Shown: piece by piece, positions 10,447-13,940 of the stretch
How positions within the stretch are numbered: the stretch's first letter is position 1
Layout of the letters: every line of letters begins with the position of its first letter
Assembly: GCA_053919585.1 (NCBI GenBank)
Contig: CM132807.1
Reading direction: 5' to 3' (one strand)
Length of the DNA: 64,000 bases
Source of the DNA: Euprymna scolopes
Taxonomy: Eukaryota
The notes under the pieces: model-generated
Told to the model about the DNA's origin: nothing
What the model saw: the letters and a program-made list of their open reading frames with translations, nothing else
Databases searched by the model: none
Program-made: the position numbers and the translations under genes

Positions 10447-12060
10447 GTGTCTATGTATGTATATATATATATAGAGAGAGGGAGAAAGAGTGAGAGTCAA
10501 AGAAAGAGAAAGAGACAGACAGAAAGAATGACACGCTGAGATTGAGATTGATACAAAGAGAAGAGATAGAAAATTTTGAAGGTTGACGGTAATGCTTCGA
10601 TATTAATTCTTATGTGTAAATGAAATTCATCTGTGGTTTTACTTCTAGAATGTCACTCTGATAATATTCTAAGTTTCGAATAAGTTTAAATTTTGAAACC
10701 AACAACTGAATATATGTACGTGTGTGATTGTGCGGGTTTGTGTGTCTGTGTGTGTGGATTGCTGAGAGCAAATATAATGTTTGAAAGATTGACGGAATAA
10801 TTTCGCTAGCCAGTATTATATTTTAAATGCGTAAATTATATATGTATATATATGTATGTGTGTGTGAGTGTGCGTGTGCGTGTGCGTGTCTGTGCTTGTG
10901 TGTGTGTGTGTTTGTGTTTCTGTGTGTGTGGTGACAGATAGATTGAAAGATTGGTATCACTTTTGTTCAATTGTATCGCCTGGTACTCAATACCAAGCTC
11001 TTAGTTTTTGAAGCAAATTAGATATGAGAAATATTAGGGATAGTGTTTGTAATAAGATAAGTGACGTTGATGTGTAGAATATATTTCACTCGAATATTAA
11101 AATCGGATGAAAAATTAATAGAAAATACATTTAATGATATCGTGGATAATTCATGACAAAATAAAGGTAAAAGAAAGTTTATAATAAAAAAAATATGCTT
11201 CAGGGGCAAAAAAAACGTAACACAACCTCTATTCTTACTAACAACATCGAAGCAATAAATAATTATTAGCTTGAGTAACAAAACGGCTCTAAAATTACGA
11301 AGGAGAAAAATGATAAGGTTTCAAAAAAGCGCATTGAAGAACTCCTAATTATCAAATGAAAGACATGATAATAAATGCAGTTTTAATGTTTACTTACAAG
11401 AAATTAACAAGAACTGCGTATTGGTTCACGATTACACTAGCCTACGTGATATAAATAAATATATTTTGGTACGTACGTTATTCGATGATTTACCGAGATA
11501 AGTGTGTGTTTATTCACGTAAACAACCTGCATCTAATAGAATAATCTGTTATATCTTGAACTGATCACCAGAAAAGAGTTTTACCAAACTTAATCGAAGA
11601 TCCTTGTTGAGATATAATTATGAAACAGAAACTCATATAAAATTGGCGAATAGAATTAATGGAATGAAAAAGTAAGAGAGTAAAAAAAAAAAAATAGAAA
11701 ATGCACAAATAAACTAGAATAAATCAAAAATATAATATAGAAACGCAGAAAAATCAACACGTGAATAATGAGAGTTGAAGAGATTGTAAACGTCTCAGAT
11801 AATTACACACACACACGCGCGCGCTCGTGCGTATAACTTTGCAAGTTCGATATAATTTTATGACTGACGTTGTTATTACTATCTAAATGGACACATAACG
11901 CTGTATGTAAAGAGATTTGCAGGAGAAAATAACATTTTATCAGGTGAAGAAAATTATTATTTTGTTCATTGTATACACAAGTGGCGGACAGATATTTACC
12001 ACACTGTATTTACGTTCCAAGATTTCTTTCTTTCTCGTCAGATAGCAGTCCTTTTGTCGT

Positions 12061-12083
12061 TAGCTACAATCATTTATAGTGCT
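12061..12083 (+). repeat. Left target-site-duplication-like direct repeat
   Basis: TAGCTACAATCATTTATAGTGCT versus TAGGTACAATCAGTTATAGTGCT at 13918-13940 (21/23 identical). Confidence 0.8.
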
Positions 12084-12120
12084 TGGCCTTCGGGCCATGA
12101 TCAAAATGTAGTATCTGTTC
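12081..12120 (+). ncRNA. U2 snRNA 5' fragment (divergent and truncated; head of a retroposed element)
   Basis: GCTTGGCCTTCGGGCCATGATCAAAATGTAGTATCTGTTC aligns to U2 GCUUCUCGGCCUU.UGGCUAAGAUCAA(A)GUGUAGUAUCUGUUC. Stem I is kept as UGGCC-UUCG-GGCCA and the branch-point recognition sequence GUAGUA is intact. Confidence 0.8.
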
Positions 12121-13917
12121 CGGCAGATGCTGCAAGCTATGACTAGCTATGACTAGCAAAGACCAGATGTGGGGGCAACCCCACATGCCTGACCATTAAC
12201 CAGCTCCCATTTCCCACCTCTCGGGAGCTGGTCCCCTTTTTCCCTTCTCCCTCCCTTCACTCCTCACATTAAAAATCGGCCTTGTGCCTAATTTGCTCGG
12301 TGGGGGAGCAAATAAATACCATCTGTTCCGGCAGATGCTGCAAGCTATGGCTATCTATGACTAGCTATGACTAGCAAAGACAAGATGTGGGGGCAACACC
12401 ACATGCCTGACCATTAACCAGCTCCCATTTCCCACCTCTCGGGAGCTGGTCCCCTTTTTCCCTTCCCCCTCCCTTCACTCCTCACATTAAAAATTGGTCT
12501 TGTGCCTAATTTGCTCGGTGGGGGAGCAAATAAATACCATCTGTTCCGGCAGATACTGCAAGCTATGACTAGCTATGACTAGCCAAGACCAGATGTGGGG
12601 GCAACCCCACATGCCTGACCATTAACCAGCTCCCATGTCCCACCTCTCGGGAGCTGGTCCCCTTTTTCCCTTCCCCCTCCCTTCACTCCTCACATTAAAA
12701 ATCGGCCTTGTGCCTAATTTGCTCGGTGGGGGAGCAAATAAATACCATCTGTTCCGGCAGATACTGCAAGCTATGACTAGCTATGACTAGCCAAGACCAG
12801 ATGTGGGGGCAACCCCACATGCCTGACCTTTAACCAGCTCCCATGTCCCACCTCTCGGGAACTGGTCCCCTCTTTCCATTCCCTTCACTCCTCACATTAA
12901 AAATCGGCCTTGTGCCTAATTTGCTCGGTGGGGGAGCAAATAAATACCATCTGTTCCGGCAGATGCTGCAAGCTATGGCTATCTATGACTAGCTATGACT
13001 AGCAAAGACAAGATGTGGGGGCAACCCCACATGCCTGACCATTAACCAGCTCCCATTTCCCACCTCTCGGGAGCTGGTCCCCTTTTTCCCTTCCCCCTCC
13101 CTTCACTCCTCACATTAAAAATTGGTCTTGTGCCTAATTTTCTCGGTGGGGGAGCAAATAAATACCATCTGTTCCGGCAGATACTGCAAGCTATGACTAG
13201 CTATGACTAGCCAAGACCAGATGTGGGGGCAACCCCACATGCCTGACCATTAACCAGCTCCCATGTCCCACCTCTCGGGAGCTGGTCCCCTTTTTCCCTT
13301 CCCCCTCCCTTCACTCCTCACATTAAAAATCGGCCTTGTGCCTAATTTGCTCGGTGGGGGAGCAAATAAATACCATCTGTTCCGGCAGATACTGCAAGCT
13401 ATGACTAGCTATGACTAGCAAAGACCAGATGTGGGGGCAACCCCACATGCCTGACCTTTAACCAGCTCCCATGTCCCACCTCTCGGGAACTGGTCCCCTC
13501 TTTCCATTCCCTTCACTCCTCACATTAAAAATCGGCCTTGTGCCTAATTTGCTCGGTGGGGGAGCAAATAAATACCATCTGTTCCGGCAGATACTGCAAG
13601 CAAAGACCAGATGTGGGGGCAACCCCACATAGCTGACCTTTAACCAGCTCCCATTTCCCACCTCTCGGGAGCTGGTCCCCTGTTTCCCTTCCCCCTCCCT
13701 TCACTCCTCACATTAAAAATTGGCCTTGTGCCTAATTTGCTCGGTGGGGGAGCAAATAAATACCATCTGTTCTTCAGATGCTGCACTTCCATTTCTTGTT
13801 CTCTTTCGGTGGAGGAGAAATCCTTCACGACTGAGACAATTTTTATTTTTGTACCTTTTCTCCACGTTAAAAAACGACCCTGGTGTCTAACTCTGTCCCG
13901 TGGGGAGGCATTGTAAA
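12084..13917 (+). mobile_element. U2-headed composite retroposed insertion: U2 fragment, 8 tandem units and a unique ~150-bp tail
   Basis: Bounded by the 19-23 bp direct repeat. GC-rich relative to its flanks and non-coding. Confidence 0.7.
12114..13765 (+). repeat. Tandem array of eight 188-218 bp structured units
   Basis: Units start (TCTGTTC) at 12114, 12322, 12540, 12748, 12950, 13168, 13376 and 13578. Lengths are 208, 218, 208, 202, 218, 208, 202 and 188 bp. Confidence 0.97.
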
Positions 13918-13940
13918 TAGGTACAATCAGTTATAGTGCT
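13918..13940 (+). repeat. Right target-site-duplication-like direct repeat
   Basis: Matches 12061-12083. Confidence 0.8.

What the first reader, a model, noticed from the sequence alone, without database searches (positions are those of the whole stretch)
12061..13940. U2 snRNA-headed, TSD-flanked composite retroposon carrying a tandem array
Seen: a 1.8-kb GC-rich insertion bounded by a 23-bp direct repeat (2 mismatches). It begins with ~40 nt of U2 5' sequence, continues with 8 tandem units and ends in a unique tail finishing ...CATTGTAAA. Known: long TSDs are typical of target-primed reverse transcription, and U1/U2-headed SINEs (SINEU) are described from crocodilians. Inference: a transcript starting in a U2-like gene read through the array and was retroposed here. 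This would be a U2-promoter-driven non-autonomous retroelement system in an invertebrate.
Basis: partly seen in the sequence, partly recalled or inferred. Interest (0 to 1): 0.85.

Follow-up and report, generated by a model that had tools for sequence, protein, structure and literature searches.

The report
U2-headed retroposon copy with array
This 1.84-kb insertion is one copy of a very abundant, young family of short non-coding retroposons in a large mollusc genome. Each copy starts with a piece of U2 spliceosomal RNA, and that piece is the landing site of a U2-specific LINE; such U2-headed elements are published only for crocodilians.

Summary
Window 12084-13921 is a GC-rich (51% against 31-33%) insertion flanked by a 19-bp target-site duplication with one mismatch. 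It consists of a U2-like head, eight ~208-bp units and a 157-bp tail.

It belongs to a family with about 38,000 tails in this 5.9-Gb genome. About 24,000 copies are a simple ~200-bp head+tail form and about 22,000 carry units. Other copies have different duplications, so the flanking repeat is real. All begin TACA(AT), which matches the family's 3' end.

The head matches this genome's own U2 and ends at U2 nt 47. That is exactly where a 7.6-kb L1-group LINE, found inside the U2 gene array, joins U2. In 18 of 18 dispersed copies the LINE 3' end abuts U2-like leader sequence, so heads act as landing pads. Units sit at U2 nt 37/38.

Three of the eight units here arose by a local 628-bp duplication whose variants occur nowhere else in the genome.

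A U2 promoter driving transcription is not shown. PolyA RNA reads look like passive co-transcription.

The scan has flagged this family before on other DNA of this genome. It is a new variant of the SINEU/Keno theme, not a new kind.

The parts
12065..12083 (+). 5' copy of the target-site duplication, TACAATCATTTATAGTGCT. Its last 3 nt (GCT) coincide with the first 3 nt of the family head GCTTGGCC, giving microhomology at the 5' junction.
   Evidence: other copies have different TSDs
12084..12120 (+). U2-derived head (with GCT at 12081-12083 it corresponds to U2 nt ~4-46): stem-loop I with a UUCG loop, then GATCAAAATGTAGTATCTGTTC. It differs from the family consensus at two positions (12098 and 12106).
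   Evidence: cmscan U2 22 bits; 33/39 identity to own U2; alignment A1; majority letters at 12098 and 12106 in reads
12113..12320 (+). unit 1 (208 bp, type A). It begins ATCTGTTCCGGCAGAT at U2 nt 38 and ends GCAAATAAATACC.
12321..12948 (+). units 2-4 (218+208+202 bp): first copy of the 628-bp block
12949..13576 (+). units 5-7: second copy of the 628-bp block, 3 differences from the first (12398, 12513, 12792). Its signature variants are found nowhere else in the genome.
13577..13764 (+). unit 8 (188 bp, lacks the AGCTATGACT repeats)
13765..13921 (+). tail: the canonical 157-nt body of the simple SINE, ATCTGTTCTTCAGATGCTGCAC...GGCATTGTAAATAGG. It is 98.8% identical to the family consensus and holds two T5 runs.
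13922..13940 (+). 3' copy of the target-site duplication, TACAATCAGTTATAGTGCT

Best explanation
Window 12084-13921 is one insertion of a high-copy, young, non-coding retroposon family. It entered by target-primed reverse transcription at a TACAATCA... site and made a 19-bp TSD.

The family's simple form is about 200 bp. It consists of a leader copied from U2 snRNA nt ~4-47, joined at U2 nt 47/48 to a 157-nt body. That junction is the same one a U2-specific, L1-group (Keno-like) LINE makes when it inserts into U2 genes. So the founder was most likely such an insertion in a U2 gene or pseudogene that was transcribed together with the upstream U2 piece (inferred).

Every retroposed copy carries the LINE's target sequence. 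The LINE does land in these heads (shown).

The 208-bp units are a second, related non-coding module. It sits almost only inside U2-like leaders, at nt 37/38. It most likely got there by leader-specific insertion, with the 5' end joined by homology (inferred). It then travels with the composite when the composite is retroposed through the tail.

At this locus the array was later enlarged from at most five to eight units by a local 628-bp duplication, through unequal exchange or replication slippage. The duplication is shown to be private to this locus; the mechanism is inferred.
For: Family size (pattern counts, up to 2 mismatches):
- 38,448 tail ends.
- 24,027 head-to-tail junctions.
- 22,281 head-to-unit junctions.

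Age: tails have a median 98.1% identity to their consensus.

TSDs: they differ between copies. 10 of 20 copies have 9 or more matched bases, against 3% of mismatched pairs.

Origin of the head:
- The real U2 is a 764-bp tandem array on C9.
- The head shares U2's lineage-specific extra A.

The LINE:
- A full-length copy lies in the U2 array. It has ORF1 of 880 aa (zf-CCHC) and ORF2 of 1145 aa (APE+RVT_1+zf-RVT). Its 5' junction reads ...ATCTGTTCT|CAG... and its TSD is U2 nt 24-47.
- ORF2 matches human L1 ORF2p at E=4e-71.
- 18 of 18 dispersed LINE 3' ends are followed by AGATCAAAGTGTAGTATCTGTTC. After that come LINE, unit, tail or other SINE bodies.
- A 5'-truncated LINE sits inside a SINE head with TSD AAGATCAAAGTGTAGTATCT.

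The units:
- 161 of 166 unit 3' ends are followed by leader sequence.
- Units also sit in front of a LINE 5' UTR.
- The unit shares a 17-nt exact run and the AAATAAATA end with the LINE 3' UTR.
- Arrays at other loci are mosaics of at least three unit types and are not colinear.

The local duplication:
- The two 628-bp blocks differ at 3 positions.
- The signature 34-mer occurs only twice in the genome, both at this locus.
- The exact signature of units 2 and 5 occurs only here.

Other: no inverted repeats.
Against: - No LINE that carries the tail's own 3' end was found. The similarity of the tail end to the LINE 3' end (ATTGTAAAT...TACAAT) is short and AT-rich.
- The LINE is strictly leader-specific in my sample, whereas tail-type copies are dispersed at TACA sites. 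The mobiliser of the tail may therefore be another LINE.
- Dispersed targets are not U2-like beyond the first 8 nt (p=0.4).
- Unit junctions at nt 37/38 differ from the LINE's own 3' junction at nt 23/24.
- Units in this array show no age gradient. Serial insertion, RT template jumping and DNA-level duplication cannot be separated for units 1-4 and 8.
- No transcript start was seen.
- The internal array could not be checked against long reads.
Confidence: 0.85

Rival explanations
1. The whole 1.84-kb composite, all eight units included, was transcribed from a master array downstream of a U2-type promoter and retroposed here in one step.
For: - One TSD flanks the whole composite.
- About 22,000 copies carry units between head and tail, too many for each to have gained them after insertion.
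- Composites with one unit recur with different TSDs.
Against: - The variants that mark units 2/5 and 4/7 exist only at this locus in 5.9 Gb.
- The two blocks differ at only 3 of 628 positions, while the TSD already has 1 mismatch in 19. So the last three units are local.
- No master or promoter was found.
- RNA reads show no discrete 5' end.
- Copies start near U2 nt 4, not nt 1, and lack U2's CTC.
Confidence: 0.1
2. The arrays are made during a single retroposition by the reverse transcriptase jumping end-to-end between several template RNAs, not by insertion into resident heads.
For: - Arrays are mosaics of different unit types under a single head and a single TSD.
- Full heads sometimes follow unit ends directly (5 cases), as expected of jumps from a 5' end to another RNA's 3' end.
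- There is no age gradient in this array.
Against: - 147 of 166 junctions lie at one internal position (U2 nt 37/38), not at RNA 5' ends.
- The same position is used in front of a LINE 5' UTR and of other SINE bodies.
- Identical neighbouring units and the private block duplication show DNA-level growth.
Confidence: 0.2
3. The locus is an assembly artefact, or an ordinary satellite that merely lies next to a U2 pseudogene fragment.
For: Short-read contigs cannot span the array, so the unit number rests on the assembly alone.
Against: - Both flank junctions are reproduced exactly by independent contigs.
- The head-units-tail order recurs at tens of thousands of loci with their own TSDs.
Confidence: 0.03

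Closest known systems
SINEU of crocodilians (Kojima 2015, PMC4494074)
   Same: - A short non-coding retroposon whose 5' head comes from U2 (or U1) snRNA.
- Many copies with the same structure.
- TSDs, and tandem copies are common.
- T-runs that argue against Pol III.
- No known promoter.
- A partner in the Keno-related Tx1 lineage.
   Different: - The host is a mollusc, so the origin is almost certainly independent.
- Copy number is far higher (about 38,000 tails).
- The head ends exactly at the partner LINE's junction in U2.
- The U2-specific LINE is still present and intact.
- A second module stacks inside the head and builds arrays of up to at least 8 units.
- Sequence homology to crocodilian SINEU was not tested.
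Keno (Tx1 clade) and Utopia, the U2 gene-specific LINEs (PMC4640811, PMC4494074)
   Same: - The 7.6-kb LINE here has an APE endonuclease and an RT.
- It lies in U2 genes and always abuts U2-like sequence.
- The units' 3' junction (nt 37/38) is next to the published Keno/Utopia site, where the downstream U2 starts at nt 39.
   Different: - The LINE's own 3' junction is at U2 nt 23/24, with a 24-bp TSD.
- It is dispersed in thousands of copies, because its target is carried by SINE heads.
- Placement in the Tx1 clade is not tested; only membership of the L1 group is shown.
Tx1L/Tx1D of Xenopus and Tx1-Mar/Mariner-N4 of crocodilians (as described in PMC4494074)
   Same: A site-specific LINE whose target lies inside another, abundant mobile element, so the target spreads through the genome.
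   Different: Here the carrier of the target is a retroposon that bears a fragment of a host snRNA gene, probably derived from the LINE's own insertion product, not a DNA transposon.
SVA of hominids (composite retroposon with an internal VNTR)
   Same: A non-autonomous composite, mobilised in trans, with an internal tandem array whose copy number varies between loci and can change in place.
   Different: - There is no poly(A) tail.
- The parts are unrelated.
- The units here are related to the element's own body and sit at a LINE target site.

Membership tests
SINEU (snRNA-headed SINE) | 5' head derived from U1 or U2 snRNA | tested here: met
   The family consensus shares a 26-nt exact run with this genome's U2, including the extra A. 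This copy is 33/39 identical. The Rfam score is below threshold because only nt ~4-47 are present.
SINEU (snRNA-headed SINE) | short, non-coding, many copies of the same structure | tested here: met
   The simple form is about 184-205 bp from head match to tail end. Counts are 24,027 head-to-tail junctions and 38,448 tails. This copy is a 1.84-kb composite.
SINEU (snRNA-headed SINE) | inserted by LINE machinery (TSDs that differ between copies) | tested here: met
SINEU (snRNA-headed SINE) | 3' tail shared with a partner LINE of the Tx1 clade | tested here: inconclusive
   The 5' junction is the same as that of the U2-specific LINE. The 3' ends share only short motifs. No LINE with the tail's 3' end was found.
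SINEU (snRNA-headed SINE) | sequence relationship to the crocodilian families | not tested
An independent origin is expected.
U2 snRNA gene (Rfam RF00004) | score at or above the gathering threshold, with the Sm site and 3' stem-loops | tested here: not met
   22 bits against a threshold of 46. Other family members score 19.8-21.4 bits. Real U2 genes score 161 bits.
classical Pol III SINE (tRNA, 7SL or 5S head) | head with an internal Pol III promoter and a body free of Pol III terminators | tested here: not met
   The head is U2-derived, and U2 genes use an external Pol II promoter (PMC4494074). T5 runs lie in the unit (CCCCTTTTTCCC) and in the tail (ATTTTTATTTTTG).
Keno-type U2-specific LINE (the partner) | APE endonuclease + RT, inserted specifically in U2 sequence | tested here: met
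   Pfam domains. The insertion lies in the U2 array with a TSD of U2 nt 24-47. 18 of 18 dispersed 3' ends abut U2-like leader.
Keno-type U2-specific LINE (the partner) | same insertion site as Keno/Utopia (downstream U2 starts at nt 39) | tested here: not met
   The LINE's 3' junction is at nt 23/24. Only the units' junction, at nt 37/38, lies next to the published site (PMC4640811).
Keno-type U2-specific LINE (the partner) | phylogenetic placement in the Tx1 clade | not tested
   Only L1-group affinity is shown (L1 ORF2p E=4e-71 against R2 E=2e-20).
DNA transposon / Helitron carrying a satellite | terminal inverted repeats or Helitron ends, and a fixed short TSD | tested here: not met
   No inverted repeats. 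TSD lengths vary from 7 to 21 bp.

The most novel reading that the evidence does not exclude
The U2 leader is not a promoter but a portable target. By retroposing a fragment of U2 together with a dispersing tail, the family has turned a low-copy safe harbour (the U2 genes) into tens of thousands of landing pads. The U2-specific LINE and its leader-specific non-coding partners (the 208-bp units and at least three other bodies) then stack into these pads. The result is a self-extending LINE/SINE system that builds mosaic head-to-tail arrays.
Probability: 0.5. Interest if true: 0.75.

Novelty: new variant of a known kind. Interest (0 to 1): 0.58.

Why it matters
snRNA-headed SINEs are published only for crocodilians, where they are old and their partner and mode of transcription are unclear.

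Here the same theme is young and very abundant, and it sits beside an intact U2-specific LINE. Two questions therefore become testable:
- How does a retroposon without an internal promoter amplify?
- How does a site-specific LINE escape the limit of a low-copy target?

The family also shows concretely how tandem arrays can start inside a mobile element and then grow in place.

For genome annotation, more than 46,000 dispersed copies of the U2 branch-point-recognition region lie inside transcribed DNA.

Tried and rejected
**Rfam**
- The gathering-threshold scan of the whole window found nothing.
- The permissive scan gives U2 at only 22 bits.
- Testing whether unit or tail bodies derive from the rest of U2 (Sm-like AUUUUUG, 3' hairpins) gave no gain in score: 19.8-21.4 bits. 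I rejected this as unsupported.

**Are the dispersed targets degenerate U2 sites?**
- Two cases, this window (15 of 26 aligned columns, with 2 gaps) and L003 (15/26, ungapped), looked U2-like.
- Over 37 unbiased flanks, positions 9-26 match U2 no better than a permuted reference (5.16 against 5.09, p=0.4). Rejected.

**Partner LINE for the tail**
- A DNA search with the tail alone returned nothing because its words are masked as too common.
- No tail-only copy lies in about 250 kb of held loci.
- BLAST of the tail against the U2-specific LINE gave no hit.
- The partner is unresolved.

**Naming the LINE clade**
- 89 homologues were found, none with a name.

**Other checks**
- Colinearity of long arrays between loci: none.
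- Age gradient along arrays: none.
- Empty allele: no contig joins 12083 to 13941. The only run with flank coverage may be the assembled animal, so this says little.
- Searching the genome with family RF00004 failed twice with a tool error. A pattern search replaced it.

Full report
**1. The observation**

- The repeat finder reports the flanking direct repeat, 12054-12083 and 13911-13940, and no inverted repeats.
- TRF reports 8.0 copies of a 208-bp unit at 12113-13772.
- The element has 50.8% G+C against 30.8% and 32.7% in the 2-kb flanks.
- Exact unit starts (ATCTGTTC) are at 12113, 12321, 12539, 12747, 12949, 13167, 13375 and 13577. The tail starts at 13765.
- The true TSD is TACAATCA[T/G]TTATAGTGCT, 19 bp with one mismatch (12065-12083 and 13922-13940). 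The four letters before it on the 3' side (TAGG) belong to the family's 3' end.
- Contigs of a DNA run cross both junctions without a difference (records 1 and 8). The array itself is too repetitive for short contigs.

**2. The U2 head**

Rfam's U2 model scores 22 bits (E=0.09), below its threshold of 46, and nothing in the window reaches a gathering score. That is expected for a fragment.

The genome's real U2 genes form a 764-bp tandem array on contig C9 and score 161 bits. Against that U2:
- This copy's head is 33/39 identical.
- The family consensus shares AAGATCAAAGTGTAGTATCTGTTCTT exactly, 26 nt, including an extra A that is particular to this genome's U2.
- The head covers U2 nt ~4-47, lacks U2's CTC at nt 8-10, and keeps stem-loop I with a UUCG loop.

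**3. A family, not a single event**

Pattern counts with up to 2 mismatches:
- 38,448 tail ends.
- 24,027 head-to-tail junctions.
- 22,281 head-to-unit junctions.

The basic element is therefore a ~200-bp head+tail retroposon. Roughly half of the copies carry units between head and tail, and copies with 1, 2, 3, 4, 6, 7 or 8 units were seen. Tails have a median 98.1% identity to their consensus, and this copy's tail is 98.8% identical. A second, closely related organism holds the family at similar depth. The scan had already flagged this family several times on other DNA of the same genome.

**4. The TSD is real but constrained**

Other copies have different flanking repeats of 7-21 bp, for example TACAATAATTATGTTGTTT, TACATCAATAATCTC and TACATTCATGTT. 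Ten of 20 copies have at least 9 matched bases, against 3% of mismatched flank pairs.

In 37 flanks not selected through their flank, the first positions after ...AAATAGG read T(0.81) A(0.95) C A A(0.65) T(0.54). This start is also found in the 5' copy of the TSD, so it lies in the target. It also equals the family's 3'-terminal consensus GGTACAAT. I read it as annealing of the RNA 3' end to the nicked target, possibly helped by an endonuclease preference. This is an inference. At the 5' junction of this copy, three letters (GCT) are shared by target and head.

**5. The U2-specific LINE**

Gaps of about 8 kb in the U2 array led to a full-length LINE.
- After U2 ...ATCTGTTCT comes CAGTGCGAAAC..., then ORF1 of 880 aa (zf-CCHC) and ORF2 of 1145 aa (APE endonuclease, RVT_1, zf-RVT).
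- The 3' UTR ends ...CTACAATAAAATAAATAAATA, after which U2 resumes at AGATCAAAG....
- The TSD is therefore U2 nt 24-47.
- ORF2 matches human L1 ORF2p at E=4e-71 over EN+RT, and R2 only at E=2e-20. This places it in the L1 group. Tx1/Keno placement is untested, and its 89 database homologues are unnamed.
- The LINE is very abundant and young. There were 21,026 first-look candidates, the 125 scored were all at least 96% identical, many ORF2 are intact, and neighbours often lie 7.6 kb apart.
- In 18 of 18 dispersed copies whose 3' end I could read, that end is followed by AGATCAAAGTGTAGTATCTGTTC. After that comes a LINE 5' UTR, a unit, the tail, or one of at least three other non-coding bodies.
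- A 5'-truncated copy sits inside a SINE head with TSD AAGATCAAAGTGTAGTATCT.

So the LINE is specific for the U2-like leader, and SINE heads serve as its targets.

**6. What this says about the head**

The SINE's U2 part ends at ...CTGTTCTT|CAGATGCTGCAC. The LINE's 5' junction is ...CTGTTCT(T)|CAG(C)T.... Both have the same U2 position and the same first letters.

The simplest reading is that the founder of the family was an insertion made by this LINE lineage into a U2 gene or pseudogene, transcribed together with the 47 upstream U2 letters. This is inferred. It explains a U2 head without invoking an internal promoter, which U2 genes do not have (PMC4494074).

**7. The units**

- Unit and tail are homologous (z=6.4). 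Both begin ATCTGTTC..CAGATGCTGCA and end ...GGGGAG(G)CA..TAAATA.
- The unit shares a 17-nt exact run (GGCCTTGTGCCTAATTT) and the AAATAAATA end with the LINE 3' UTR.
- Of 166 unit 3' ends in the loci held, 147 are followed by ATCTGTTC (U2 nt 38), 7 by (A)TCAAAGTG, 2 by AGATCAAAG and 5 by a full head. Only about 5 are followed by unrelated DNA.
- Units also stand between a partial head and a LINE 5' UTR.
- Arrays at other loci are mosaics of at least three unit types and are not colinear with each other.

So the unit behaves as a leader-specific module, and the tail as the module that disperses. The site at nt 37/38 is next to the published Keno/Utopia site, where the downstream U2 starts at nt 39 (PMC4640811).

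Whether units enter by insertion into resident heads or by template jumping cannot be decided here. Identical neighbouring units show that DNA-level duplication also contributes.

**8. This locus**

- Units 2-4 (12321-12948) and 5-7 (12949-13576) form a 628-bp duplication with three differences.
- A 34-mer that marks units 4 and 7 occurs only twice in 5.9 Gb, both here.
- The exact signature of units 2 and 5 also occurs only here.

These variants therefore arose at this locus, or in a source that left no other copy, and the block was then duplicated. The copy had at most five units when it arrived. There is no age gradient along the array.

**9. Transcription**

- In a polyA RNA-seq run, reads of the family lie on both strands in about equal numbers.
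- 81% run on into unlike sequence, and no place shows many starts or ends. This looks like passive transcription inside host transcripts.
- T5 runs in unit and tail argue against Pol III, as Kojima argued for SINEU.
- A U2-promoter-driven master remains possible but has no support here.

**10. Comparison and novelty**

- In the held library, SINEU is described only from crocodilians, and no paper links it to molluscs.
- There, SINEU is tied to Tx1-Mar, a group that clusters with Keno.
- This finding is an independent, much larger and younger case with the U2-specific LINE still in place, plus leader-specific stacking.

I class it as a new variant of a known kind. As a single copy of a family that the scan already knows, its own interest is moderate.

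Noticed in passing
G000:C9 about 168,865,000-168,968,000 (L046-L052, L065, L066): The real U2 snRNA genes form a 764-bp tandem array of at least about 100 units on the minus strand. It is interrupted several times by ~7.6-kb LINE insertions, seen as gaps of 7.9-8.4 kb in the spacing.
   Followed up: partly
coordinates, e.g. C15:53357836/53365405, C7:111722042/111729630, C14:62616918/62624554: Copies of the U2-specific LINE often lie 7.57-7.66 kb apart on the same strand. At C3:83565700 one copy's 3' end is separated from the next copy's 5' UTR only by the 24-25-nt U2 fragment (L068). These are head-to-tail LINE arrays.
   Followed up: partly
L074, L075, L076, L078, L079, L084, L087-L089, L091 (downstream of the LINE 3' end); L070:420-700: At least three further non-coding bodies follow the same U2-like leader, for example ...TTCTTCAGGTGCTACATTTCAATTTC... 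and ...TTCTTAGAATTCAAGCGGTCTCATC.... This suggests a whole set of leader-bearing retroposon families.
   Followed up: no
L054:2875-2951: A 77-nt perfect-armed palindrome matches Rfam mir-548 on both strands (48 and 45 bits, below the threshold of 90). It looks like a MITE-type hairpin.
   Followed up: no
L061 and L062 (C1:8946037 and C1:8952148): Two simple copies 6.1 kb apart have identical flanks and TSD. This points to a local segmental duplication rather than two insertions.
   Followed up: no
window 11806-11830: A short (CA)n(CG)n microsatellite lies 235 bp upstream of the insertion.
   Followed up: no
window 12054-12064 and 13911-13921: The 11 letters upstream of the 5' TSD (TTGTCGTTAGC) resemble the element's own last 11 letters (TTGTAAATAGG) at 7 of 11 positions. 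This may be chance.
   Followed up: no
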